In this document: one piece after another, positions 31,064 to 64,000 of the stretch
Layout: every line of letters begins with the position of its first letter
How positions within the stretch are numbered: the stretch's first letter is position 1
Assembly (NCBI RefSeq): GCF_023055435.1
Contig: NW_025963957.1
Location: 8,246,001 to 8,310,000, forward strand
Length of the DNA: 64,000 nt
From: Haliotis rufescens
Taxonomy: Eukaryota
Reading direction: 5' to 3'
The notes under the pieces: model-generated
Told to the model about the DNA's origin: nothing
Seen by the model: only the letters and a program-made list of their open reading frames with translations
Databases searched by the model: none
Program-made: the position numbers and the translations under genes

Positions 31064-31408
31064 TCACAAGTTGAAGTTGAAGCCATGTTGAGTGCTGGTC
31101 ACCTCCTTATACACGGTGTTGTCCTGCAGGGTGACGGGGCCAGACAGAGTCTCCTGGGCTGCAGGGTGTAAGCCGGACTCTTCCACTTCCTTACATGAAT
31201 CACTCCGAAACATGGCGCCCCTCAGGTTCAGAGCTGCTGTAGGTTCATGTGTGTTGAAGGTCAAGGTGAAATCCTCCTTTTGGAGATCACGCAGGAGGTG
31301 AGACACGTTGAGCACATGGTGAGGGAGGATGGGTCCGGACATTTCTATAACATGGCCTTTCTGGAAATTCCCTGAAGCATCTGTCTGTTTGGCCACCGAG
31401 TGCTTCAG
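31064..31408 (-). CDS. DONSON: DONSON coding exon 10 (last)
   Basis: ttctgcag|LKHSVAKQ...EMSGPILPHHV...GFNFNL*. Confidence 0.9.
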   Translation of the reverse strand: MKHSVAKQTDASGNFQKGHVIEMSGPILPHHVLNVSHLLRDLQKEDFTLTFNTHEPTAALNLRGAMFRSDSCKEVEESGLHPAAQETLSGPVTLQDNTVYKEVTSTQHGFNFNL

Positions 31409-34400
31409 CTGCAGAAAGGAGATAGTGTGAATGTCTCGGCCGATGACACATAGAGAATCACTGACAAAAGTGTGTGCAAGCCCCGGATTTTGTCCACTTT
31501 TATCAACTCGTGTTGATATATTTGATATCATAAGACACTCAGCTGAGATTTTATTTATCATCCAACATCATTCTTCCAACTTTATCAGTTTGTAGAAAGT
31601 AATAAGCAGTGTCTTAAGTGTAAAAAGTACTGCTACCAGCTTCAGTAGCAGAGCCATTAGTGATGATGTCATTTGATTGTGACATCATGGTATAATTTTA
31701 TAATTTAAAGTTTACACGATATACAGCTTTTCAATTGGACGAGAGGTCGGTCACATGACCGCGAAATTGATGTTCATAAGTGTATGAACAACACAATTTG
31801 ACGTTCATACGTTTTTCACGAGACCATGTTCTTGTAATGACGTAAACACTGACGGACTACTTCCACATTCCTGGGGAAACCCCTGGGAATTCCCTAGCTC
31901 CGACGTTCATACAGTTTGGCCCTCACTCTATGAAGGTTCATACTCCAATGAACTCACACAAAGTGAAAGTCAATTCTTAAAACAAATGACATCACAATGG
32001 TCTGCAAAACATTGTGATGCAATTTCATTGCAGCGATATCTACAATGTAGATAGCGCTTCATGTCACCCAAGCGATATCTCCTGTGGGAGCCAGTTTTGG
32101 ATGATAAATAACAGTAAGCCCTGGTGATGACAAGTGATATGACAGGCGCTTCAGCTAATGACAAGTGATATTACGTGCACTTCCCCTAATGACAGTGACA
32201 TGTAATGAACGGTCAGCTGCAGAAAAGTGATATTATGAGTACTTCAGCTGATGACAAGAGATATAATTAGAGTACATGTATGACTTACTCACTTTATTAG
32301 GTTTGAGTGTGGCTCCTTTGAATGCCGTGGGAGCAAGGATGGTTGGGGGGATGCCGGCCTGGGGACCACTGGTGGCGGTGCAGCTCCGGCAGTTGAGGAG
32401 AAAGTTGAACATCGCCTGGACGTCAGCACCTTCCACGTACACCAGGGACTCAGGCCTGTTGTCTACACGCCGGAATCCTTCACGCTGACTTCACCAGTTA
32501 AGGAAATAATAACTGCATATTTTTGTATAGGTCTATCAGTGGATGAGTAGGTCTATCAGTGGATGAGTAGGTCTACCAGTGCATGAGTAGGTCTATCAGT
32601 GGGTGGATTGGGTCTATCAGTGGATGAGTAGGTCTATCAGTTTGTGAGTAGGCCTATCAGTGTATAATCAGTTTATTATGTGTATAATCAAACTTTCACT
32701 CGCTACATTTGTTCAATAATGATTTAAAAGCCAACTCACCCTTGTGGCGTCACTACCCTGCCTATGCCTTCCTTGTTCCTTAGTTTTACACACATTATCT
32801 TCACAGTGTTCCCTCATACACTTTTCTGCCAGAAAATCACGCAACAAATTATTTACTACGTACTCGTGAATTAGACATCTGACTCCTAGAGACATTTTCA
32901 GCTCACGCTATATCGGCTCATTCCTCACCTTTCGGTATCATCTAGATTGCGGAATGGGACGAGTGTGCGAAGTGGCATCAGGATCACTCATATAAGTGTC
33001 CGTAGACTAGCATCAAGAGACACCATGCCCACCCGTAACCTTCGTAAGTGTCTGTCACCACTTCGACCCTTTCTTTTCAGTTCTGTAACGTCTTTGGAAG
33101 GACCAGGTCAACAGTGAGGCCGTAGACTGGTTGGTAAGATGTTGGGCTACAAATCCAAAGGTGGCAAGTTCACTTCCAACTTGCTTGTCTCAGTGACATG
33201 TGACCTATGGCAGAGATTGTCCTCACGAGAAGTTGTATTCTGAAACTGCTCCACTCATCTTAAGGTTGATTGTGTAACTACAAAATATCAACACATACAA
33301 TACACTGAACAACTACTGATCCTGTGCTGTCACCTGGCTGTGAACTAGGGGAACCCATGGCCCAGCAGTGTGGGTGAGATGGACAAAGGGAGACAACTAC
33401 ATGTGGCATCTACCCGATGTGGGTGAGATGGACAAAGGGAGACAACTACATGTGGCATCTACCTGATGTGGGTGAGATGGACAAAGGGAGACAACTACAT
33501 GTGGTATGTACCTGATGTGGGTGAGATGAACAAAGGGAGACAACTGCATGTGGCATCTACCTGATATGGGTGAGATGGACAAAGGGAGACAAGCAACTAT
33601 CAGCTCTGGGTAAATCAGACTGAGGAGGATACAGTTTGACCTTGTTCGGGTCGAGTGAGGGGAAGCTCTTTTTGTCGAGGCCCATGCTCTCCAACCACAC
33701 AGATGCACCTTCATCATTGTCAATCAGATCATCATCCTCGTCATCATAGCTGCAGGCAGTCCTGTACAATACAAGGTAATGAGGGCATTTTACAACACAG
33801 ACACAGCACCCTACTGCTAAAACACAGACACAACAATCTACTGCTAAAACAGACACAACAACCTACCACTAAAACACTGACACAGCAGTCTATTGCTAAA
33901 ACACAGACACATCAAACTATTGCTAAAGCACAGACACACCAATAAATTGCTCAAGTGAAGACACAGCAATCGATTGCTAAAACACAGATACAACAGCCTA
34001 CTAGTAAAACACAGACACATCAATCCACTTCTAAAACACAGACACAACAGTCTATTGCTAAAACACAGACACAGTAATCTACTGCTAAACACAGACACAG
34101 CAGTCTAATGCTAAAACACAGACACAGCAATAAATTGCTTAAGCGAAGACACAGCAATCTATTGCTAAACACAGACACAACAACCTACTGCTAAAACACA
34201 GACACAACAATCTACTGCTAAACACAGACACAACAACCTACTGCTAAAACACAGACACAACAATCTACTGCTAAACACAGACACAACAACCTACTACTAA
34301 ACACAGACACAACAACCTACTGCTAAACACAGACAGGGCAACCTACTGCTAAAACACAAACACAGCAATCTGCTGCTAAACACAGACACAACAACCTACT

Positions 34401-37400
34401 GCTAAAACACAAACACAGCAATCTGCTGCTAAAACACAGAAACAGCAATTTACTGCTAAAACACAGAAACAGCAATTTACTGCTAAAACACCGAAACAGC
34501 AATTTACTGCTAAAACACCGAAACAGCAATCTGCTGCTAAAACACAGACACAGCAATCTGCTGCTAAAACACAAACACAGCAATATATTGCTAAAACGCA
34601 GACACAGCAATCTCCTGCTAAAACACAGACACAGCAACATACTTATGGGGACCTGATGGCTGTGGGGGTTGTGGCACCGCTGCTGGGTCTGTGTTCTGGT
34701 CAGACTCGAGAGCAGAGCCTCTCTCAGGAGACAATTCTAGCTTCTTCCCCTCCAAGTTGGGCATCCGGAAACTGATGCCTGGAAGTGTCACAAAGATAAG
34801 GGTGAGTTGGTGTAACGCACGCACAAAGACATATACACACACAGAAACACAGATACAGACACACATACAGATGTGTGACACACAAAATGTTTATCGGGTT
34901 TCCCACTTTACTGAAGCAAATGCTCACTACCACATACAGCTACGTTTCGGTGTTTCGGTGTAGGTTCAAGTGACCACTTGTGTTGTAATGGTGTTAGAAC
35001 CTACACCGCAATGTCGCTCCTAATTGTAAAAAAGAAGTTGTTCAACAATACATCTTATCCTTACTTAGTACTCCAACTTGTAAATGCCTCTCAAAGAAGT
35101 TCAGTTCAGCATGATTCCAAGTAATGTGTTAACAACATACCGTCTTGCTTGAATGCCTCCCTCAGACCACGGGTTGTCGGTGTGAGACAAGCGTTGATGT
35201 TAGTCTGACTGCTGACCCCTGCAGCACGGAACACCACCGTGAACTGATGAGTGCACAGATAGAAATATGGGCATTTCCCGGCTCTCAGTAGGTGGAACAC
35301 GGATGTCAAGCTCTCCGTCCTAAAACCACACAAGAGTCACAGTCCCCTAGAAGTTGCTACATCAAACATATCAATCAAAAGAGGCCCATAGGGCCTGTAT
35401 CGCTCACCTGGATATTTACCCAATCATGACAAAATATACATTTGCATTGTACATGTATATAATACTGCATGTAACATTTAAAATGAGTGGATAGCAAATC
35501 TGACAGCATGAACATGTATTTCTCTACATACAATGCAGTATAAAGATCTGAACCGTTTCCATGTTATGATCAAGGATAAACCATATCATAGGCATTACTC
35601 TCTTCATAACAAACAAATTTATACAATGTATCTGTTTATTATAGGGTCGGGATAATATCAGTTTGCATGTTATGGTCAAGGTTCTAACTCCTTCCGGAGT
35701 GTCTGACAGATGAACAGAAGTGCCACTCCTGGTAGCATATGTGCATTCCTCTCATTATACTCTCAACTGTACATATGGTTAAAGACCTGTGAAGATCCGG
35801 GATAGAAGAGGTCTTCAGCAATCCATGCTTGCTGTAAAAAGAGACTGCTTGTCGTAAGAGGCGACTATCAGGTTCAGACTCAATTATTTACAGACTGCTG
35901 TCATATAGCTGGAATATTGCTGAGTGTGGCGTTCAACAACAAACCAACCAACCAATATATGGTTATACGGTGGGGATCTTAACTGTGTCCAAGTTATAAA
36001 CTCTTTTCAGCCCTGCCCCTTAGTCCCCAGGGAAGGGGGTAGGGTTCAGCCCCTCCATTTCTCCAGTTGGAATCCCCACCATTGGAGAATGCTTCCAACC
36101 AAATATGGTTGATAACTATCTCTAAGTTCCAGAGAGGAAGTCGTTTAAAACAATAACGCCAAATTACTCCTATTTGGCCCCGACCCCGACCCTGGCCCTC
36201 AGCCCCTCCATTTATACACTTTTGAATCCTCACCACCGGAGAATGCTTCCAACCAAATATGGTTGATATCTATCTATTAGTTCCAGAGAAGAAGTCGTTT
36301 AAAGCAGTATAGCCAAATTGCCCCTATTTGGCCCCGCCCCTCAGCCCCACCATTTGTACAATTTTGAATCCCCAACACCGGAAAATCACCATGTTATAGC
36401 TTCCAGATTTCACTGAAAGGTGGAGCAGAACAACAGCCAAGTTGTGTTGGCGCCTTCTGAGGTTGAACATCCTTAGAGAGCAAGTGACTTCCACTTGTCT
36501 TCGAATGGGTGTTTAAAATATCAGCAGAATTCTGAGAGAAGTGTTTGTAAGACACAATAGCTTGGATCATTCCTGCAATGTTTCAACATCACCTTTACTT
36601 TCAGAGAAGTTGTGGACAATGTCAAACTTAACGATCGATGGATCCTGTTAGTCAGGTGAGTTGTGAAAATATTCCAATGTCAACCTAACCCTGTGCCAGG
36701 ACCAACCTCGGGGACACTCAGTGTCTTACCAGTCTCTGTGCAGGGCAACTGTGGCTTCGTCGTTGGATCCCACAATACTGACATTGCTGGAACAGACAGA
36801 CAAAGGTGTTACCATCTTCAACTTAAACAAGTAGGCTAGTACTATGTCCCTCTCAACCGCTGCAGCAGAACAATCCTAAAAGTGGAAACTCAAGAGGAGT
36901 ATAGTCATTTAGCGAAAAAGTTTTTTTTTGTTAATGTCACAAAAAAAAATTATTTTGACTGTAAAAACTTTGAACAAGAGGCATCAAAAAATCCCCTGGC
37001 CCCCACACATTCGAAAGAACAAATAATCTGACTGTTAGTTAAGTCCAACTTGATTAGAGAATGCCAATCTAATTTGTCCGTCCATATACAAGAGTAGTTA
37101 TTGAGCTGTTGGGATTCAGAGCTTTGTATTTCTATGTCAGGTCAAACCAATATGAACAGAGTCAAAGTCAAACTTGTTGCCATGGAAACAAGGAACAAAA
37201 AATCTAAAAATCCCAAAATAGCAAAAGGCATCAGTTGACAACATGGTTTTTGAGCGTGCAAAGTTTCATGAAAAAATACTTATTAGTTTTAGAGATATTG
37301 CCCGGAGAAACACACCACTATCAACATAGTCAAAGTCAAACTTGATGCCAAGGAAACAGAAAAATAAAAAAAATAAACAAGAGTTTGCCAATAACGTGGC

Positions 37401-40400
37401 TATATCCCCCGCCCCTGTTGCAGAATTTTATGACATGCCGTATTTGACGTAATAAGCGCCCAGGGCGCTCTCAAAATTAGAAATAGAGGGCTCTTATTAG
37501 AATATAATTTTGGTGGAAAAAAGAGTGTTGAAAGATAAATTTTGTGGTTTATGCTGACACACTGAAATGTTTATATGCGACATTTTTCCAGAATTTAATT
37601 GCCCATAATTAAGAATGCATATAACACACGAGTGCGTATTATACGCGAATAAATAATAAGTCTTGTGTACATTGATCAATTGGAAGGAGTGCTAATTGGG
37701 ATTGTTCACTAGCCAATATATTAGCAAATATCACTGTGGGCGCTTATTAGAGCGGGGCGCTTATTACGTCTAATACGGTAATTAAATCTAAACAAACTAT
37801 AACCTTATTTAACCGAGGTGGAACTTGTCATGGAAATTGTAAAAAAAAGAAGAGTTTGGAACCTAAGTCCATCTTGTTGCCATCTTATGCTCCGGAAACG
37901 AACCCTACCCTCACAGAACCTAAGTCCATCTTGTTGCCATGGAAACGTAAAAAATAAAAATTTATAAAATTACTAAAAAGCAAAAGGCACCAGTTCAGCA
38001 TGTACTTGACAGACCTGCAAAGTTTCATGAAAAAATATTGAATGTTTTTTTAGTTATGCTCTGGAAACAAAACGTGACGACGGACGTAAGTATGTACGGA
38101 CCCCGTTTCTATATCCCCCAACTTTGTTGGGCGGGGGATAATAATCACCAAATAGCAAAAGGCACCAGTTGACAACATGGTGTTTGTGTATCCAAAGTTT
38201 CATGAAGAATACTTATTAGTTTTAGAGATATGGTCCGGAAAACACACCACTATCAACAGAGTCAAATATCAAACATGTTGCCAAGGAAACAGAATTTTTT
38301 TTTTTATAAAAATCCCTAAGTAGCAAAAGGCATTAGTCGCTAACATGGTCTTTGTGTGTGCAATGTTTCATGAAAGAATACTTATTAGTTTTAGAGATAT
38401 GGTCTCGGCAAACACACTACTATGAACAGAGTCAAAGTCAAACTTGCTGCCATGGAAACAGAAAGAATGTAATCTCTAACAATTCCTAAATAGCAAAAGG
38501 CACCACTTCAGCCCCTAATTGATGGAGGTACCAAGTTTGGATTAAAATCTTTCAAGTTATGCTCTGGAAATATGGATGGACAGACAGACAGACCAGATAA
38601 TGACTACATCCACTGCATTGTATGCCAGGAGGATAATCACAAAATGCTATTACTTTGAACAGTATTTCAGATAGTGATCAGCAGATCCTAGCATGACTAA
38701 GACAAGCAACTCTACACAGTGAATACAGTGCCCTGGTGAGAGAATAGTTCCATCTGCAGCCTACCTGATCTTCTGTTCTGCTACAATGCGTGGGAAGGGC
38801 TTCACCCAGGGGATGTTAGGGTGCACCCAGTACAGACAGCAGCTGTGGAAGGTGGAGCAGCGGTCAGCATCACCGGGCCACTGACAAACAAACACCACAA
38901 GTTAACATTTACCAGTAATTATTTTTTCCCTGTTCAACACAGCCAGTCTGTGAAAAGGGGGAACCTAGTGCTTTATGGTTTAAATCTTTGAGAGAAAAGC
39001 TCTTAGAACTAACTAAACAAAACATGTGGTATGTCGAACAGATTAAGCAAAACGTAGGTTAAGAACCCCTCATCTCATCTTCTTAAAAATTACACTAAGT
39101 GGAGCACTCGTTATTCTATTTCTTCTGGAGATATTCCCTCTGACTGCAGGGAAGGATGACGGTGTACCTGGTGCTGCATCTGTACATGCTGGCTAACAGC
39201 CCGCGCCTCCTCATTCATCTTCAGCTGGGTACACCACGACAGTGACGCCTCCGACACAATCCTCATCTTCACCTTCAGACTCCAGTCCAGTGGCAAGTGC
39301 TTGTGACTCTGTACCCGAGGGGGAGCAGGACACTGTATGTTGTGGGGTGTGGGGTCCATCATCACAGGGGAATGGTTAGCAACAAACTCGGACAACTTGG
39401 TGTCAGGCGGACGTTCACTCGTAATGTCTGTTTGTGGCTGAAAAATGTTAATATCAAATGAAACCATGACATGTAGCCTACTAATTCGTGAGAGTTTTGT
39501 GTTTTTCATCTAATTACAAAACAACTACAATAACATGAGTTCTTAGATGGCTAGACATCATGCACAAGGTGCTCAAAGCGCCAACATTATTACATAGTCT
39601 TTTCAACAATCTATCAATTAATTCAAAATCTCATTAAATTGAGACTTATCTATTGTAAAAGTATTATAAACAAATAAAGAAATGGCAGATACCACCAACA
39701 CTATAACTGTGCACTGATTGTTCAACAGCTCAGTGATTCTGACACAAAAGGCTGTATATTGGTCAATGAATTGGACCCAAGAAATGTCCTGTCAATGGCA
39801 AAAGTCAGTAAGTCAAACTAATAAAAATGGTGGATGAACCATAAAAACAAATCAATGCAATACTGTTGGTGGCCAACCGGCACCTGAAACTCCGCAGTAG
39901 TGTGTACTGACTGGTTATATATCAGGTCTGTCAGCCATGACCGGCATCATCATCTGTTCCACCACTGCCAGGTAATACCTCACTGCTCTACCACTGCCAG
40001 GTAATACCTCACTGCTCTACCACTGCCAGGTAATACCTCACTGCTCTACCACTGCCAGGTAATACCTCACTGCTCTACCACTGCCAGGTAATACCTCACT
40101 GCTCTACCACTGCCAGGTAATACCTCACTGCTCTACCACTGCCAGGTAATGCCTCACTGCTCTACCACTGCCAGGTAATACCTCACTGCTCTACCACTGC
40201 CAGGTAATACCTCACTGCTCTACCACTGACAGGTAATACCTCACTGCTCTACCACTGCCAGGTAATAGTATTATACCTCACTGCTCTACCACTGCCAGGT
40301 AATACCTCACTGCTCTACCACTGCCAGGTAATACCTCACTGCTCTACCACTGCCAGGTAATACCTCACTGTTCCACCACTGCCAGGTAATACCTCACTGC

Positions 40401-42849
40401 TCTACCACTGCCAGGTAATACCTCACTGCTCTACCACTGCCAGGGAATACCTCACCGCTCTACCACTGCCAGGTAATACCTTACTGCTCTACCACTGCCA
40501 GGTAATACCTCACTGCTCTACCACTGCCAGGTAATACCTCACTGCTCTACCACTGCCAGGTAATACCTCACTGCTCTACCACTGCCAGGTAATACCTCAC
40601 TGCTCTACCACTGCCAGGTAATACCTTACTGCTCTACCACTGCCAGGTAATACCTCACTGCTCTGCCACTTCGGCCCATCTTCAATGTTGACTAGGCTTC
40701 TCACGCCATCACTAATGTCAGACTCAGGGTGTTGGACTTGTTCGCTGCCATGCTCACAAGTCAGCGCCTCATTCACTCTCTACAAGACAAATTCAATCAT
40801 GTTCAGACTGTACCTTGGCGATCGAAGTCAGATGAAAGGGTAGGTCACTCCATTCTGCATGTCATACTTGATTTAGGGTATTGACTCAATCCTGACATTT
40901 GTAAAACAAACTGTCCTCATCATCAATATGTGCCTTATGAACCATTGATACATTCATTAAGGAACAAATTAAAGCATTTTACTTTGTATGAGAAACAGTA
41001 TTCTATCTTATGAGATAATAAACATATAATAACATCATTTCATTTCTGCCTGAAGACATCTGTTTAACTTGTTAGTGGAAAAGGGTCTCTTTTGACTGTA
41101 ATTTGACTGTAGGACCCCATCGCGGCTCTTGGCTAACGATACCAGAGATAATGAAAAATGTCACTTGTATAGGCCTCACTGAAGTTGTTTGTGTGATCAC
41201 ATGGCACGTGCTATTTGCTGGTACAGTTAATCGCGTGCAGGCTAAAATGGCACCTCGGCATCTCATTTGGCGAAAAAAGCTACTAATTGACGTGCGAAAA
41301 CGGCAGCTCTATTTTTAATAACAATAAGAATGATTTATGTAGTAGTGAGTATACTTTATTTACATGCTTTATTATGTTATGTTGTTGTATGTATGTTTTC
41401 CTTGGGCGGGGACACGGTCTGCTATCTGAAGAAACATTCTTGGCTGCCGGCAGAAAGGGAATATATATAACATAAATATCAAATATGTAGTATACCTGTA
41501 GTTAAGTTTCTTGACATTTCCGCCACTCAGTTTCAGCTTGACATTGAGCTAATCTGAGGAAAGGTAATCAAAGCATGTGATGTTTTCACAATAAGTTTAG
41601 TCGCCTCCAAATAAATTAGAATAGAGGCTAAGTTCCTATGTAAACTTGTTTAAATGCGATTAACATTTCTCAATTATTTGTGTTTACAAGTGACTATGTG
41701 AGTTCTCATTTATTTACTTCAAAGCATGTAATGTTTTCACCATAAGTATAGTTGTACCTCCCAACATGCCCTATCAGAGTCAGCGAGTATTTCACTAGAT
41801 CTATCAAGGTTTAAAAAAAAGGTGCCATTTTCGCCAATTGGTGCCATTTTCGCTCGGTCCCGTTTTAGCTAAAACCCCAGTTAATCAACAGGAAAGTATT
41901 TCCACTGTTTGGATTCCCTCATCACGTTATGACAGAAGTCGGAAAGATTTCCGCCCATAGCATCATTAAAGTACACGCTGCCAGCCACCTCATGATATAT
42001 CTATATATAAATGTTTATACACTATGAATGAAATAATATGTAATATTTATATATATAATGTACATTATGTATATATACCTCTCATGTTGATAGTTATATT
42101 TATTCCATATATAGTTAGTTTGTACCCTGCCCTACGAGGGTGTTCCGTACAATAAAAATTCTTGATTCTTAGCCCCCTTCCAAAAGTTATGTATGGATAA
42201 GCATTGGGACACAATCCATTTAATCATATTGGGGGGGGGGGGGGCAAACAAGTAGAAGTCCTAGTCAGAAGTCTCCTCAAATGCCTTCCACGGACAGAAA
42301 TGGGCTGTTTGCTCGTAGTTTCATCCAAATCAAAGTTATTGCTACAATGAACTTCATACACAGATTGAGAATATTTCTGACATAACATGAAACATATGCC
42401 GATAACTGGGTCCCATTGTACAAAACAACCTTAGCATGACGAGTGTCGTAAGTCTATGTTAAGGTATGGGTGTTACGATCACCTTGGCGCTAAGATCGCT
42501 TTGTGGAACGGGTCCCTAGTCGCTTGGCCAGTAGGCTAAAGATTTGTTTTCTCACATGACCAGTGCACTCTACCTCGTTCATAACATCCAAAGCCTTAAA
42601 AAGTTCTCTGGGATCCTCTTTATTAGTATTTCCATGATTCGGTCTTTTGTTGTCAGTTTTGCAGCCAAAGGGGTTTTTCCTCTTGGTGACGGGACGATCA
42701 CTTGACGGTCTCGAGCTCAGCAATGCAGAAGACAGTTCAGTGGGGTCGTGGATAGTTTTTCTTCGAGCTAGCGTTCGCCGTTTGATACTTCGAACCTTCA
42801 TCACATCAGACGGGTTCTTCCATTTAGGTGAATGTTCGGCGGCAGCCAT
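31064..42849 (-). CDS. DONSON: DONSON (downstream neighbor of SON, replisome/CMG assembly factor), 10 coding exons, ~609 aa
   Basis: Exons 42849-42574, 40779-40654, 39437-39168, 38880-38765, 36786-36730, 35319-35141, 34778-34643, 33761-33633, 32488-32293 and 31408-31064 join with GT-AG ends and consistent phases into 1830 nt. Recognisable DONSON motifs: KRKNPF, LPLDWSLK, YWVHPNIPW..FPRI, CPYFYLCTHQFTVVFRAAG, PTTRGLREA, DNRPESLV, SGPQAGIPPTILAPTAFKGAT, GPILPH. Confidence 0.93.
32293..32488 (-). CDS. DONSON: DONSON coding exon 9
   Basis: QREGFRRVDNRPESLVYVEG...SGPQAGIPPTILAPTAFKGATLKPNK|gtgagt. Confidence 0.93.
32489..33632 (-). other. U12-type (minor spliceosome) GT-AG intron, DONSON intron 8
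   Basis: 5' splice site GTATCCTC. Branch site TTCCTTAAC (32505-32497) lies 8 nt before the intron end (..TGGTGAAG), with no polypyrimidine tract. The reading frame requires this AG. Confidence 0.88.
33370..33592. repeat. 49 bp tandem repeat in DONSON intron 8
   Basis: GTGGGTGAGATGGACAAAGGGAGACAACTACATGTGGCATCTACCTGAT, ~4.5 units. Confidence 0.9.
33633..33761 (-). CDS. DONSON: DONSON coding exon 8 (alternative in-frame acceptor possible, exon start 33749)
   Basis: Acidic DDEDDDLIDNDEGASVWLESMGLDKK...KVKL; ends at U12-type donor GTATCCTC. Confidence 0.88.
33792..34638. repeat. ~27-29 bp minisatellite filling DONSON intron 7
   Basis: GCTAAAACACAGACACAGCAATCTACT variants. Confidence 0.93.
34643..34778 (-). 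CDS. DONSON: DONSON coding exon 7
   Basis: ttccag|(G)ISFRMPNL...SGPH|gtatgt. Confidence 0.85.
35141..35319 (-). CDS. DONSON: DONSON coding exon 6
   Basis: ttttag|TESLTSVFHLLRAGKCPYFYLCTHQF...PTTRGLREAFKQD|gtatgt. Confidence 0.93.
35375..36385 (+). mobile_element. Partial HINE-like element
   Basis: AAGAGGCCCATAGGGCCTGTATCGCTCACCTG start and ~160 bp internal repeats at 36000-36385. Confidence 0.5.
35784..35955 (+). mobile_element. Family C copy with internal deletion
   Basis: Starts GACCTGTGAAG and ends gctggaatattgctgagtgtggcgttcaacaacaaaccaacc. Confidence 0.8.
36730..36786 (-). CDS. DONSON: DONSON coding exon 5
   Basis: gttccag|(S)NVSIVGSNDEATVALHRD(W)|gtaaga; 57 nt, phases fit both neighbours. 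Confidence 0.85.
37376..38140 (+). mobile_element. Nested HINE-like element
   Basis: AACAAGAG start, subterminal TATATCCCCCGCCC inverted to terminal GGGCGGGGGATA, 3' hairpin, GACG-type microsatellite. Confidence 0.65.
37438..37778. mobile_element. Tc1/pogo-type MITE
   Basis: TIR CCGTATT(T/A)GACGTAATAAGCGCCC at both ends; TA on the right flank. Confidence 0.8.
38765..38880 (-). CDS. DONSON: DONSON coding exon 4
   Basis: ttgtcag|WPGDADRCSTFHSCCLYWVHPNIPWVKPFPRIVAEQKI|gtaggc. Confidence 0.9.
39168..39437 (-). CDS. DONSON: DONSON coding exon 3
   Basis: tttttcag|PQTD...LPLDWSLKVKMRIVS...QHQ|gtacac. Confidence 0.85.
39953..40670. repeat. 29 bp minisatellite containing the DONSON exon 2 donor site
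   Basis: ACCACTGCCAGGTAATACCTCACTGCTCT, ~24 units. Confidence 0.95.
40654..40779 (-). CDS. DONSON: DONSON coding exon 2
   Basis: ttgtag|RVNEALTCEH...GPKWQSSE|gtatta; 126 nt, open, phase 0/0. Poorly conserved region, supported by splice signals and phase only. Confidence 0.7.
42574..42849 (-). CDS. DONSON: DONSON coding exon 1
   Basis: MAAAEHSPKWKNPSDVMK...KRKNPFG...DVMNE, then donor GAG|GTAGAG; 276 nt, phase 0. Confidence 0.85.
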
Positions 42850-43271
42850 AATGAATAAAGGAAATCTACCGTAGGCCTATACGAATGTTGTCCTTATCAA
42901 ATACTTTCACAATGGGATTCACGAGAAGTCGTTCATTCACAAATCCCGCCCGGAGTAAGGTGACTCGAAAACTTGAACCGTGTTGTTTAGTTTGTAGGCG
43001 GAAGTCGACAGTCGTGTCAATGAATCAGCTGTAATAATATTTGTGATCACGCCTTTGGAACAACCATATAACACATACTTTAACATTCAAGCACGTTGAA
43101 GAATTTATTCACATAAGAAACCATTATGTAGAACGTGCTAGATCCATACAATATCCAGAGCCAAACTTTAAATTAAACCGAAAGACCTTGACCTTTTTCT
43201 TATCGGGAAATACCGAGGAGAAAGTCCAAGTGGTTGTATTCTATCTGTTTTGCTAATTTCAGCTGCTAATA
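42850..43271. promoter_or_regulatory. Candidate bidirectional promoter between DONSON and MGST3
   Basis: Only 422 bp between divergent start codons; ETS/GABP-like GCGGAAGT (42998-43005) and E2F-like AATCCCGCC (42942-42950). Confidence 0.65.
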
Positions 43272-61334: not shown

Positions 61335-64000
61335 TTAAGAGAGGATTAGCATCACCATGGCCAACAAACACAAAACAGGTGAAGAGGTGAACACTCCGGC
61401 GGCGCTGTCCTTGTCACGAGGGAATGAACCGGTGCCAGCATCGTCCCTGGAGTAGGTGTTCTTGAAGACGGCCCTGAAACATAGATAGGAACATTAGCTC
61501 GGGTATCAACGATGTCCTGACGACTGCCCTGAAACATTGATAGGAACAGTAGCTGTGGTATCAACGATGTCCTGACGACTGCCCTGAAACATTGATAGGA
61601 ACAGTAGCTGTGGTATCAACGATGTCCTGACGACGGCCCTGAAACATGGATAGGAACATTAGCTGTGGTATCAACGATGTCCTGACGACGGCCCTGAAAC
61701 ATGGATAGGAACAGTAGCTGTGGTATCAACGATGTCCTGGCGACGGCCCTGAAACATGGATAGGGACAGTAGCTGTGGTATCAACGATGTCCCGACGACG
61801 GCCCTGAAACATGGATAGGAACAGTAGCTGTGGTATCAACGATGTCCCGACGACGTCCCTGAAACATGGATAGGGACAGTAGCTGTGGTATCAACGATGT
61901 CCCGACGACGGCCCTGAAACATGGATAGGAACAGTAGCTGTGGTATCAACGATGTCCCGACGACGTCCCTGAAACATGGATAGGGACAGTAGCTGTGGTA
62001 TCAACGATGTCCCGACGACGTCCCTGAAACATGGATAGGAACAGTAGCTGTGGTATCAACGATGTCCTGACGACGTCCCTGAAACATGGATAGGAACAGT
62101 AGCTGTGGTATCAACGATGTCCTGACGACGGCCCTGAAACATGGATAGGAACATTAGCTGTGGTATCAACGATGTCCTGACGACGGCCCTGAAACATGGA
62201 TAGGAACAGTAGCTGTGGTATCAACGATGTCCTGGCGACGGCCCTGAAACATGGATAGGGACAGTAGCTGTGGTATCAACGATGTCCCGACGACGGCCCT
62301 GAAACATGGATAGGAACAGTAGCTGTGGTATCAACGATGTCCCGACGACGTCCCTGAAACATGGATAGGGACAGTAGCTGTGGTATCAACGATGTCCTGG
62401 CGACGGCCCTGAAACATGGATAGGAACAGTAGCTGTGGTATCAACGATGTCCCGACGACGTCCCTGAAACATGGATAGGGACAGTAGCTGTGGTATCAAC
62501 GATGTCCTGGCGACGGCCCTGAAACATGGATAGGAACAGTAGCTGTGGTATCAACGATGTCCCGACGACGTCCCTGAAACATGGATAGGGACAGTAGCTG
62601 TGGTATCAACGATGTCCTGGCGACGGCCCTGAAACATGGATAGGGACAGTAGCTGTGGTATCAACGATGTCAGTAGCTGTGGTATCAACGATGTAATAGG
62701 AAACACAGTGATAGGAAACATAAGTCTGCAAGAAGCGTCTGAAACGTGTTTGATATTCCGTTGTGGTATCGACTATGCATGTGGTATCATAGTTATGTCG
62801 TGGCAACCTGCTCTTCTGTTTTCGTCTGTGGTCTGACCGTACCTGTATCGTCTAATCATCTCCTTGATCCCCTCAGCGATCGTCTCCTCATCATCAAAGA
62901 AAGGTCTCACATCCACTGAGATCTCCACAATCAGGTTGTCCTTCAACGTCATGCCGGCTGACTTGCCCGTCATCGTGTACAGCTGGAACATTAGCAAAGA
63001 CATTGTCTATAGCACGACACCATAGGCATAGCCTCTAACCAGTGGGCAACAGACAACACCCACCCACTTATCCTCTAACCTAGCAGAGCGAAACAGACAA
63101 CACCCCTCCACATATCCTCTAACCTAGCAGAGAGTAACACACACCACCGACATATCATCAAACCTATCAGTGGGTAACATACACCACCCACCCACATATC
63201 CTCTAACCTATCAGTTTAGTAACACCCACCACCCACATATCCTCTAACCTATCAGTGGGTAACATACATCACACTACCAAATATCCTCTAACCTAGCACA
63301 GAGTAACAGAGAACACCCTTATATCCTCTAACCTATCAGGGAGTAAAATACACCACCCACATATCCTCTAACCTGGCAGAGAGTAACATACACCAAGAAC
63401 ACTCACATCCTCTAACCTAGCAGCGAGTAACATGAATCGAAGACCCACATATCCTCTAACCTATCAGTTGGTAAAATACATCACATAACCACATATCCTC
63501 TAACCTAGCACAGAGTAACAGACAACACCCACATATCCTCTAACCCCTCACGGAGTAACATACACCACCCACATATCCTCTAACCTGGCAGAGAGTAACA
63601 TACACAAACAACACTCATATCCTCTAAGCTAGCAGCGAGTAACATGAACCGAAGACATATCCTCTAACCTAGCACAGAACAACAGACAATATTCGACCAC
63701 ATAACCTCTAACCTAGCAGTGAGTAACATAAACCAACCACCCACATATCCTCTAACCTATCAGAGAGTAACGCACACCACACACATATCCTCTAACCTAT
63801 CATTGAGTAACATAAACACCCATCCACATATCCTCTAACCTAGCAGAGAGTAGCATATATGTTTCTCAAGGCTGATGTTCTGCAGTTGATGACGTACCAC
63901 GTTGTCGGCCTTGGAGTAGACGATGAGGAGAGTTTCGTTACAGTTGCCGGTCAGCTTCCATCGCTTTGTGAGGAGATAGGCGAACAGTCGGGCGTTCTTC
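61335..64000 (-). CDS. 3' part of a TPM-domain / MOLO-1-like protein gene with C-terminal GPI-anchor-like signal (5' end lies outside the window)
   Basis: Exons 64000-63898 (KNARLFAYLLTKRWKLTGNCNETLLIVYSKADNV|gtacgt), 62982-62843 (LYTMTGKSAGMTLKDNLIVEISVDVRPFFDDEETIAEGIKEMIRRY|gtacgg) and 61473-61335 (RAVFK...DSAAGVFTSSPVLCLLAMVMLILS*) join in phase. The W..G.C..LLI.YS..D..LYT.TG...L.D..I..I.....F......G pattern resembles the TPM/MOLO1 domain from recall; no search was run. Confidence 0.7.
61467..62694. repeat. 55 bp minisatellite containing the last-exon acceptor of the TPM-like gene
   Basis: CGACGGCCCTGAAACATGGATAGGAACAGTAGCTGTGGTATCAACGATGTCCYGA, ~22 units. Confidence 0.95.
63030..63856. 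repeat. Degenerate ~40-45 bp repeat
   Basis: CACATATCCTCTAACCTAGCAGAGAGTAACA.. variants. Confidence 0.85.

What the first reader, a model, noticed from the sequence alone, without database searches (positions are those of the whole stretch)
39953..40670. Tandem amplification of a live 5' splice site (~24 copies of the DONSON exon 2 donor)
Seen: the 29 bp unit on the sense strand is AGAGCAGTGAG|GTATTACCTGGCAGTGGT, the last 11 exon nt plus the donor and 18 intron nt, so ~24 near-identical donors follow the exon. Using copy 2 or 3 shifts the frame (+29, +58), and read-through hits TGA before the next in-frame copy, so only the first donor gives full DONSON. Inference: copy number could tune productive versus NMD-bound splicing of an essential gene, or something enforces use of the first site. 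The unit also contains an AG|GT proto-splice site, as in the tandem-duplication model of intron gain.
Basis: partly seen in the sequence, partly recalled or inferred. Interest (0 to 1): 0.75.

Follow-up and report, generated by a model that had tools for sequence, protein, structure and literature searches.

The report
Splice-donor minisatellite in abalone DONSON intron
An intron of an abalone DNA-replication gene begins with 24 tandem copies of its own exon end plus splice signal, yet the messenger RNA is cut at the first copy, so this is one more example of a repeat type already described in amphioxus and in one human gene.

Summary
A 29-bp x 24.4 array lies at 39954-40670. Its first unit is the last 17 nt of DONSON exon 2 plus the first 12 nt of intron 2. 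23 of 24 units keep a G|GT donor, and 19 carry the identical 9-mer GAG|GTATTA. Only donor 1 keeps the frame open.

Transcriptome-like contigs from two related organisms join exon 1 to exon 2. They leave exon 2 exactly at 40654 and continue with the first 30 nt of exon 3. So the exon is real and the first donor is the one used. The annotated Haliotis cracherodii protein has the same junction.

The unit occurs nowhere else in the 1.33-Gb assembly. Interior units are a hybrid of the two edge copies, which points to unequal exchange between two imperfect 13-nt direct repeats.

This is a "mirage" minisatellite (amphioxus; PMC3087553) and matches the human F7 IVS7 VNTR (PMC1557585). The scan has already followed up the same kind at other loci of this genome (s1-805545, s1-814395).

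Nothing supports tuning by copy number through NMD, but contigs cannot exclude rare isoforms. It is a new member of a known kind, of modest interest.

The parts
42574..42944 (-). DONSON exon 1 (CDS starts with ATG at 42849-42847; 276 coding nt, ends in phase 0; donor GAG|GTAGAG)
   Evidence: Sequence. RNA-like contigs X15 and X17 cover 42574-42944 and 42574-42942. tblastn with H. rubra DONSON residues 1-95.
40780..42573 (-). Intron 1 (1794 nt, GT..AG). It holds a high-copy transcribed repeat at about 42383-42564.
   Evidence: Joint 40779->42574 'skips 1794, CT..AC' in 1 contig each of X15 and X17. Depth is in the thousands at 42383-42564 in all four runs.
40654..40779 (-). DONSON exon 2 (126 nt, 42 codons, phase 0 to phase 0; poorly conserved N-terminal linker ending K-W-Q-S-S-E)
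   Evidence: Translation. Contigs X15 record 10, X17 record 19 and X18 record 23 lie on it and stop at 40654. Aligned with exon 2 of three annotated Haliotis DONSON proteins, 88% identical to H. cracherodii.
40648..40656 (-). The working 5' splice site GAG|GTATTA (cut between 40654 and 40653)
   Evidence: Loose ends at 40654 in X15 and X17 read as the reverse complement of the first 30 nt of exon 3. Only this cut keeps exon 3 in frame.
39954..40670 (-). 29-bp minisatellite: 24 full units plus a 13-nt partial unit. 17 nt lie in exon 2 and 700 nt are the first 58% of intron 2.
   Evidence: TRF. Unit table. Donor 9-mers. The unit is found only here in the 1.33-Gb assembly. Array contigs are also present in organism B.
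40642..40670 (-). Unit 1, the ancestral exon/intron junction. It starts AGTGGCAGAGCAG (repeat R1) and differs from interior units by C instead of T at position 6. In the exon frame that T would make a TAG stop.
   Evidence: Frame.
39954..39966 (-). Terminal partial unit AGTGGTGGAACAG (repeat R2), the downstream edge copy. Interior units = 5' part of R2 + 3' part of R1.
39438..40653 (-). Intron 2 (1216 nt, GT..AG)
   Evidence: Sequence. Contig evidence for both ends.
39168..39437 (-). DONSON exon 3 (270 nt, phase 0 to phase 0; holds the conserved LPLDWSLKVKMRIVS motif)
   Evidence: Sequence. PDB match to Xenopus DONSON E=8e-4. Representative search, 13 hits. Alignment.
31067..38883 (-). DONSON exons 4-10 and their introns. 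Exon limits are approximate, taken from tblastn: about 38883-38767, 36788-36730, 35318-35140, 34779-34643, 33762-33632, 32487-32290 and 31411-31067.
   Evidence: tblastn of H. rubra DONSON on the window. Exon 9 against 8q6o, E=1.4e-15. Exon 7 and 8 junctions read.

Best explanation
This is a 'mirage'-type minisatellite, a by-product of local tandem duplication in a very minisatellite-rich abalone genome.

Origin (inferred). The ancestral exon 2/intron 2 junction was bracketed by two imperfect 13-nt direct repeats 29 nt apart: AGTGGCAGAGCAG in the exon and AGTGGTGGAACAG in the intron. Misalignment between them, by unequal exchange or replication slippage, duplicated the 29 nt that hold the donor. 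The hybrid unit was then amplified to 24 copies.

Splicing. The spliceosome uses the first donor (shown). The likely reason (inferred) is that only this copy sits directly next to the defined exon and is the first to emerge from the polymerase. This is 5'-to-3' 'first functional site' selection, as shown experimentally for the equivalent human F7 IVS7 array. The other 22 GT copies behave as silent pseudo-sites and are removed with the intron.

Any occasional use of a later copy would give a premature stop. Such transcripts would be expected NMD targets (inferred). The array therefore costs the gene little and probably has no function of its own.
For: Shown:
- The array and its register with the exon.
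- 19 of 24 donor 9-mers are identical to the real one. Donor 1 and donor 3 (a consensus unit) share 11 nt upstream and 26 nt downstream, so only position and upstream exon context set donor 1 apart.
- Contigs X15 (2167 nt, organism A) and X17 (2127 nt, organism B) join exon 1 to exon 2. They leave exon 2 at 40654 with a loose end equal to the start of exon 3. X18 has a 226-nt contig that also ends its match at 40654.
- The annotated H. cracherodii DONSON reads ...KWQSSE|PQTDITSE..., the same junction.
- Later donors all give premature stops.

For an origin in place from the exon end:
- The unit is found only at this locus in G000. All 7 matches fall within window 39967-40670.
- The exon end K-W-Q-(S/T/R)-S-E is kept in H. 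rubra and H. asinina DONSON.
- The interior unit start AGTGGT+AGAGCAG is the 5' part of the downstream edge copy plus the 3' part of the exon copy. That is the product expected from exchange between them.
- The edge copies escape homogenisation, as described for mirages (PMC3087553).

For ordinariness:
- 24 merged arrays cover 37% of this window.
- A second array in the window copies a 3' splice site.
- Earlier notes list many such loci in this genome (leads only).

Known precedent for first-site use: PMC1557585, abstract and discussion read.
Against: - All four runs laid were Logan contigs. They show presence, not absence, and drop rare variants. 69 loose-end rows and 1321 pieces were not shown, so minor use of later donors is not excluded.
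- Short array contigs do occur in the RNA-like runs: X15 record 9 at depth 5.5, and X17 records 16-18 at depth 7-13. I read them as pre-mRNA or intron signal, because other intron pieces have similar depth. They could also come from extended exon 2 forms.
- That these runs are RNA is the tool's guess.
- Copy number and its variation among individuals were not measured.
- The scanning / exon-definition reason for first-site choice is carried over from a mammalian minigene study. It was not tested in a mollusc.
- The RNA fold of exon 2 plus three units is not distinctive (z = -1.79), so it neither supports nor excludes a structural contribution.
Confidence: 0.85

Rival explanations
1. Regulatory decoy array. 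The extra donors are used at a rate that depends on copy number. This diverts part of the pre-mRNA to PTC-containing, NMD-bound forms and so tunes DONSON output.
For: 22 further GT donors are intact. Two of them (units 2 and 7) have AAG|GT, nearer the consensus at -3 as I recall it. All later donors give premature stops. Array-derived short contigs exist in the RNA-like runs. NMD would hide such forms from steady-state assemblies.
Against: The only exon 2 exits shown are at 40654: the X15 and X17 loose ends plus the end of X18's piece, across 3 studies and 2 organisms. In the one system tested experimentally, identical downstream copies do not compete at all (PMC1557585). Amphioxus mirages do not disturb splicing (PMC3087553, PMC3902484). 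The array type is common in this genome and sits in unrelated genes, which fits neutral origin better than gene-specific regulation.
Confidence: 0.07
2. U1 landing pad. The array works as a cluster of U1 snRNP binding sites in the intron. It could help define the first donor, suppress premature polyadenylation, or slow release of the transcript, without the sites ever being spliced.
For: 23 near-identical U1-type sites lie within 700 nt directly behind a rather weak donor. GAG|GTATTA matches the general consensus only from -2 to +3 (consensus recalled, sequence). The array is shared by two related organisms.
Against: There is no direct evidence. Being shared by two organisms that differ at about 2% of non-coding sites does not show selection. 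Units carry decay-like variants (GC donor, 8-nt insertion).
Confidence: 0.04
3. Reverse direction. A pre-existing minisatellite supplied the exon end and donor (exonisation of a repeat unit), rather than the exon end seeding the array.
For: In principle the register alone cannot give the direction.
Against: The exon end K-W-Q-x-S-E is conserved in H. rubra and H. asinina proteins, which are only 43-80% identical to the window in tblastn of exons 1-3. Unit 1 carries C where interior units have a T that would create an in-frame TAG. The hybrid structure of interior units points from the edges inwards. The unit is absent elsewhere in the genome.
Confidence: 0.02
4. Assembly artefact. The array, or its copy number, is an error of the assembly.
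For: Copy number was not checked against long genomic reads. Short-read contigs cannot span 717 bp of 29-bp units.
Against: Organism B's DNA-like contig runs from exon 2 through unit 1 into the first 11 nt of unit 2. Its 57-nt array contigs have depth well above single copy. An 88-nt contig of run X15 (organism A, another sample) shows exactly the two changes of the unit-11 variant between consensus units, as in the assembly. The assembly has 615 contigs for 1.33 Gb.
Confidence: 0.02

Closest known systems
'Mirage' minisatellites of amphioxus (Adh3, globin BflGb6/BflGb9, troponin C, PGBD5)
   Same: Both are tandem repeats whose unit spans an exon-intron boundary. Many but not all copies keep the AG/GT signal. 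Regular splicing is not disturbed. Edge copies escape homogenisation. Both 5' and 3' boundaries can be affected (PMC3087553 and PMC3902484, passages read). All of this is seen here.
   Different: The host is a mollusc (abalone), not a cephalochordate, and the gene is DONSON. The unit is 29 bp and there are 24 copies (Adh3 units are 10-72 bp, globin units about 150-160 bp with 3-6 copies). Length or somatic instability, shown for Adh3, was not tested here. I did not see the original Adh3 paper; it is cited only through PMC3087553.
Human F7 intron 7 37-bp VNTR with 5' pseudo-sites
   Same: The first element spans the exon-intron boundary. The authentic donor is followed by identical donors, and only the most upstream one is used physiologically (PMC1557585, abstract and discussion read). 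The same layout and the same outcome are seen here.
   Different: F7 has 5-9 copies and this array has 24. In F7 some later sites would keep the frame; here none escapes the stop. The F7 mechanism rests on 50 minigene constructs; here only the natural outcome is seen.
Intronic minisatellite of Pacific abalone TSSK1-like intron 3
   Same: Same genus. A 27-bp unit, tens of copies (62 shown), and copy number differs between individuals (PMC6905558, passages read). This shows that abalone introns commonly carry such arrays.
   Different: In the passages I read it is not described as including an exon end or a splice site.
Intron gain by tandem duplication of an AGGT proto-splice site (Rogers model, as summarised in PMC3087553)
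   Same: The duplicated unit contains AG|GT.
   Different: No new intron lies between copies. The intron ends in unique sequence and exon 3 is unrelated to the unit, so this is not an instance of that model.

Membership tests
Mirage minisatellite (tandem repeat spanning an exon-intron boundary) | The repeat unit includes an exon end and the adjacent intron start, in register with the real junction | tested here: met
   Unit 1 (40670-40642) is 17 exon nt plus 12 intron nt. 16 of 17 exon nt match the interior units.
Mirage minisatellite (tandem repeat spanning an exon-intron boundary) | Many, not necessarily all, copies keep the splice signal | tested here: met
   23 of 24 units keep G|GT, and 19 of 24 have the identical 9-mer.
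Mirage minisatellite (tandem repeat spanning an exon-intron boundary) | Regular splicing at the authentic site is kept | tested here: met
   Contigs of X15 and X17 leave exon 2 at 40654 and continue with exon 3. X18's piece also ends at 40654. Rare isoforms cannot be judged from contigs.
Mirage minisatellite (tandem repeat spanning an exon-intron boundary) | Length instability or polymorphism of the array | not tested
Mirage minisatellite (tandem repeat spanning an exon-intron boundary) | Edge copies are excluded from homogenisation | tested here: met
   Unit 1 (C at position 6) and the terminal partial unit (GGAACAG) differ from the interior consensus.
F7 IVS7-type array of 5' pseudo-sites | Only the most upstream of several identical donors is used | tested here: met
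   assembled transcripts only; annotated H. cracherodii junction.
F7 IVS7-type array of 5' pseudo-sites | Downstream copies are functional and take over when the first is inactivated | not testable with these tools
   This needs minigenes or natural donor-1 mutants.
DONSON (protein downstream neighbour of Son) | Sequence homology along the protein to characterised DONSON | tested here: met
   Exon 9 against Xenopus DONSON 8q6o, E=1.4e-15, and exon 3, E=8e-4. H. rubra DONSON maps as 10 collinear exons. 87 homologues, the named ones mostly called DONSON. The local Pfam copy gave no hit for the exons or for P0015. The family PF27662 listed seems to be missing from that copy.
Intron gained by tandem duplication of an AGGT site | The intron is bounded on both sides by copies of the duplicated exon sequence | tested here: not met
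   The array ends at 39954 in unique intron sequence. Exon 3 (39437 onwards) starts CCACAA..., unrelated to the unit.

The most novel reading that the evidence does not exclude
The array is not neutral. Its 22 spare donors, whose number probably varies between individuals, capture U1 or are occasionally spliced. Array length would then set how much DONSON pre-mRNA becomes productive mRNA and how much goes to NMD.

More broadly, abalone genomes may seed minisatellites at splice junctions more often than chance. That would give dozens of natural 'F7-like' experiments on 5' splice-site choice outside vertebrates.
Probability: 0.08. Interest if true: 0.6.

Novelty: new member of a known kind. Interest (0 to 1): 0.3.

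Why it matters
The finding has three modest uses.

- It extends the 'mirage' / F7-type repeat to a mollusc and to an essential replication gene.
- It gives a clean natural case of donor choice. Nineteen donors are identical in sequence over at least -11 to +12, and only the first is seen in mRNA. That supports position, rather than site strength, as the deciding factor in a lophotrochozoan too.
- The hybrid interior unit is a readable trace of how such an array is born.

It does not open a new question. The type is described, and the scan has already reported it at other loci of this genome.

Tried and rejected
- RNA structure as the reason for first-site choice. The fold of exon 2 plus three units gave z = -1.79, with 9 of 200 shuffles folding as well. 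This is not distinctive. The donor's quasi-palindrome can pair between any two units, the first included.
- The overlapping upstream donor GCA|GTGAGG (5 nt upstream; 20 of 24 units carry GCAGTGAGG). Rejected as the working site. It would make exon 2 121 nt long and shift the frame, and the contigs end at 40654, not 40659.
- Pfam scan of the exons and of P0015. No family was found, so DONSON identity rests.
- Dispersed repeat or transposon origin of the unit. Rejected: all 7 matches in G000 fall at this locus. The tool warns that its counts are lower bounds.
- Intron-gain model. Rejected (see membership test).
- Enrichment of arrays at splice junctions. I made only a rough mental estimate and ran no test, so I make no claim.
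- Literature. 'mirage' + minisatellite + splice site found 2 papers, both on amphioxus. Minisatellite / exon-intron boundary / mollusc found 76 papers with at least 2 terms, 12 of them listed. Only the abalone TSSK1-like paper was relevant, and it does not describe a junction-spanning array in the passages I read. The original amphioxus Adh3 paper did not turn up in the two searches that could have found it. The paper on human introns from tandem arrays was seen only as a phrase hit in other papers' texts and was not read. Supplementary files were not opened. Additional files 4-7 of PMC3087553 may hold details on mirage unit structure.
- The spliced (joined) protein model was not sent to any search. 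Searches were made exon by exon.
Full report
**The array.** On the minus strand, 40670 to 39954 is a 29-bp minisatellite. TRF gives 24.4 copies, 94% matches and score 1285. Cutting it at AGTGG gives 24 full units plus a 13-nt partial unit.
- Unit 1 (40670-40642) reads AGTGGCAGAGCAGTGAG|GTATTACCTGGC. That is the last 17 nt of an exon followed by the first 12 nt of the intron.
- Of the 24 donor 9-mers, 19 are GAG|GTATTA. Two are AAG|GTATTA (units 2 and 7), one is GAG|GTATTC (unit 8), one is GAG|GTATAA (unit 14, which has an 8-nt insertion) and one is GAG|GCATTA (unit 18).
- Donor 1 and donor 3 (a consensus unit) are identical over 11 nt upstream and 26 nt downstream.

**The gene.** Sequence reading gives this model:
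- exon 1: CDS 42849-42574, 276 nt;
- exon 2: 40779-40654, 126 nt;
- exon 3: 39437-39168, 270 nt.

All three are in phase 0, with GT..AG introns. Identity as DONSON rests on four results.
- Exon 3 matches Xenopus DONSON (8q6o) at E=8e-4, and exon 9 matches it at E=1.4e-15.
- A search of 1.84 billion representatives with exon 3 gave 13 hits. The best full-length hit was a 613-aa protein, which NCBI names Haliotis rubra DONSON.
- That protein maps on the window as 10 collinear exons from 42849 to 31067.
- The closest named protein is H. cracherodii DONSON. It is 97%, 88% and 97% identical to exons 1, 2 and 3.

So the window comes from an abalone. The local Pfam copy gave no hit. The spliced model was never joined for a search; every search was made exon by exon.

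**Is exon 2 real, and which donor is used?** The look-up of sequencing runs listed DNA-like holders and six small transcriptome-like runs of two coded organisms, A and B.
As its text allows, I laid 40381-43100, which holds exon 1, exon 2 and units 1-10.
- One 2167-nt contig of X15 (organism A, no differences) lies on 42574-42944 and 40654-40779. One 2127-nt contig of X17 (organism B) lies on 42574-42942 and 40654-40779. Both carry the joint 40779->42574 (skips 1794, CT..AC on the + strand, which is GT..AG in sense).
- Both contigs leave the stretch at exactly 40654. Their 30-nt loose-end consensus is the reverse complement of the first 30 nt of exon 3.
- X18 has a 226-nt contig whose match also ends at 40654. 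No joint was seen in X18 or in X10.
- The annotated H. cracherodii protein reads ...KWQSSE|PQTDITSE..., the same junction.

So the exon is transcribed and the first donor is the one that makes the mRNA, in two organisms and three studies.

**What later donors would do.** computed the outcome, with exons joined only inside the script.
- Donor 1 leaves exons 1-3 open.
- Donor 2 adds 29 nt and stops at codon 169, in exon 3.
- Every later donor, including the in-frame ones, meets the TGA of unit 3 at codon 153.

**Limits of the RNA evidence.** All runs were Logan contigs, which show presence and drop rare variants. 69 loose-end rows and 1321 pieces were not shown, and 'RNA' is the tool's guess.
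- Short array contigs occur in the RNA-like runs: X15 record 9 (88 nt, depth 5.5) and X17 records 16-18 (depth 7-13).
- Other intron pieces have similar depth (for example X15 41145-41379, depth 4.7), so I read the array contigs as pre-mRNA. Use of later donors at a low level is not excluded.
- The two differences of the X15 array contig are exactly those of the unit-11 variant, shifted by six units. An independent sample therefore agrees with the assembly's array interior.

**Origin.**
- The unit is found only at this locus in the 1.33-Gb assembly. All 7 matches fall in window 39967-40670 (the tool warns that counts are lower bounds).
- The exon end K-W-Q-(S/T/R)-S-E is kept in H. rubra and H. 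asinina DONSON. The exon end is therefore old.
- The three versions of the first 13 nt of the unit are informative: exon copy AGTGGCAGAGCAG, interior AGTGGTAGAGCAG, terminal partial copy AGTGGTGGAACAG. The interior form is the 5' part of the terminal copy joined to the 3' part of the exon copy. That is the product expected from unequal exchange or slippage between two imperfect direct repeats 29 nt apart (inference).
- The interior T would make an in-frame TAG. Only unit 1 keeps the C of the Gln codon.
- Organism B's DNA-like contig runs from exon 2 through unit 1 into unit 2, and its array contigs have depth far above single copy. The array is therefore shared by the two organisms, whose non-coding sequence differs by about 2%.

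**How it most likely works.** Shown: the layout, first-donor use, and premature stops for all other donors. Inferred: the first donor wins because of its position.
- It is the copy next to the defined exon and the first to be transcribed.
- Amphioxus mirages likewise do not disturb splicing (PMC3087553, PMC3902484).
- The predicted RNA structure is not distinctive.

I put 0.85 on a passive, tolerated by-product. The remainder I divide among copy-number tuning by NMD (0.07), a U1 platform (0.04), the reverse direction of origin (0.02) and an assembly artefact (0.02).

**Context.**
- 24 merged arrays cover 37% of this window and 16% of the DONSON span.
- DONSON intron 7 is almost wholly a 27-bp array.
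- A 55-bp array at 61463-62694 copies a 3' splice site.
- Earlier notes of this scan list many donor-seeded arrays in this genome. Two were followed up with the same verdict. I used them as leads and checked the two literature precedents myself.
- In my searches no paper describes such a junction-spanning array in a mollusc. An ordinary intronic 27-bp minisatellite is reported in Pacific abalone TSSK1-like (PMC6905558).

**Verdict.** This is a new member of a known kind, interest 0.3.

Noticed in passing
window 33794-34637 (minus strand, DONSON intron 7): A 27-bp x 31.6 array fills almost the whole intron. It runs from intron position +6 (donor AA|GTATGT, exon 7 ends at 34643) to about 30 nt before exon 8. 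Every unit holds an acceptor-like GTTTTAG|CAG, but the unit is not derived from either flanking exon.
   Followed up: partly
window 61463-62694: A 55-bp x 22 array. On the minus strand each unit holds tgtttcag|GGCCGTCG..., and the copy at the 61463 end abuts an open frame. It is the 3' splice-site counterpart of the same repeat type, and here the last copy would be the real acceptor. The scan has already noted it as s1-818256.
   Followed up: partly
window 40683-40742 (exon 2): Exon 2 differs from organism B's DNA-like contig at 9 of 126 nt (7.1%). The flanking non-coding pieces differ at 19 of 1006 (1.9%) and the region around exon 1 at 4 of 610. Fisher p = 0.002, or 0.05 if the three adjacent double changes count once. 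Applying the 10 differences of organism B's RNA-like contig X17 gives 5 amino-acid changes. This suggests fast evolution or a mutation hot spot next to the array.
   Followed up: partly
window 42383-42564 (DONSON intron 1): Depth is in the thousands in all four runs, with many loose ends at 42505-42517. This is a high-copy repeat that also appears in the transcriptome-like runs.
   Followed up: no
whole window: 24 merged tandem arrays with periods of 12-79 bp cover 37% of the 64 kb. This is an extremely minisatellite-rich stretch.
   Followed up: partly
window 39954-40670, both strands: The donor sits in an 11-nt quasi-palindrome, AGGTATTACCT. On the + strand every unit therefore reads CAG|GTAATA, also donor-like. 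Any two units can pair through this core in single-stranded RNA or DNA.
   Followed up: partly
window 40352-40380 (unit 11) and 39954-39966: Unit 11 carries the same GGAACAG variant as the terminal partial unit. This suggests that the edge copy was moved into the array interior by exchange or conversion.
   Followed up: no
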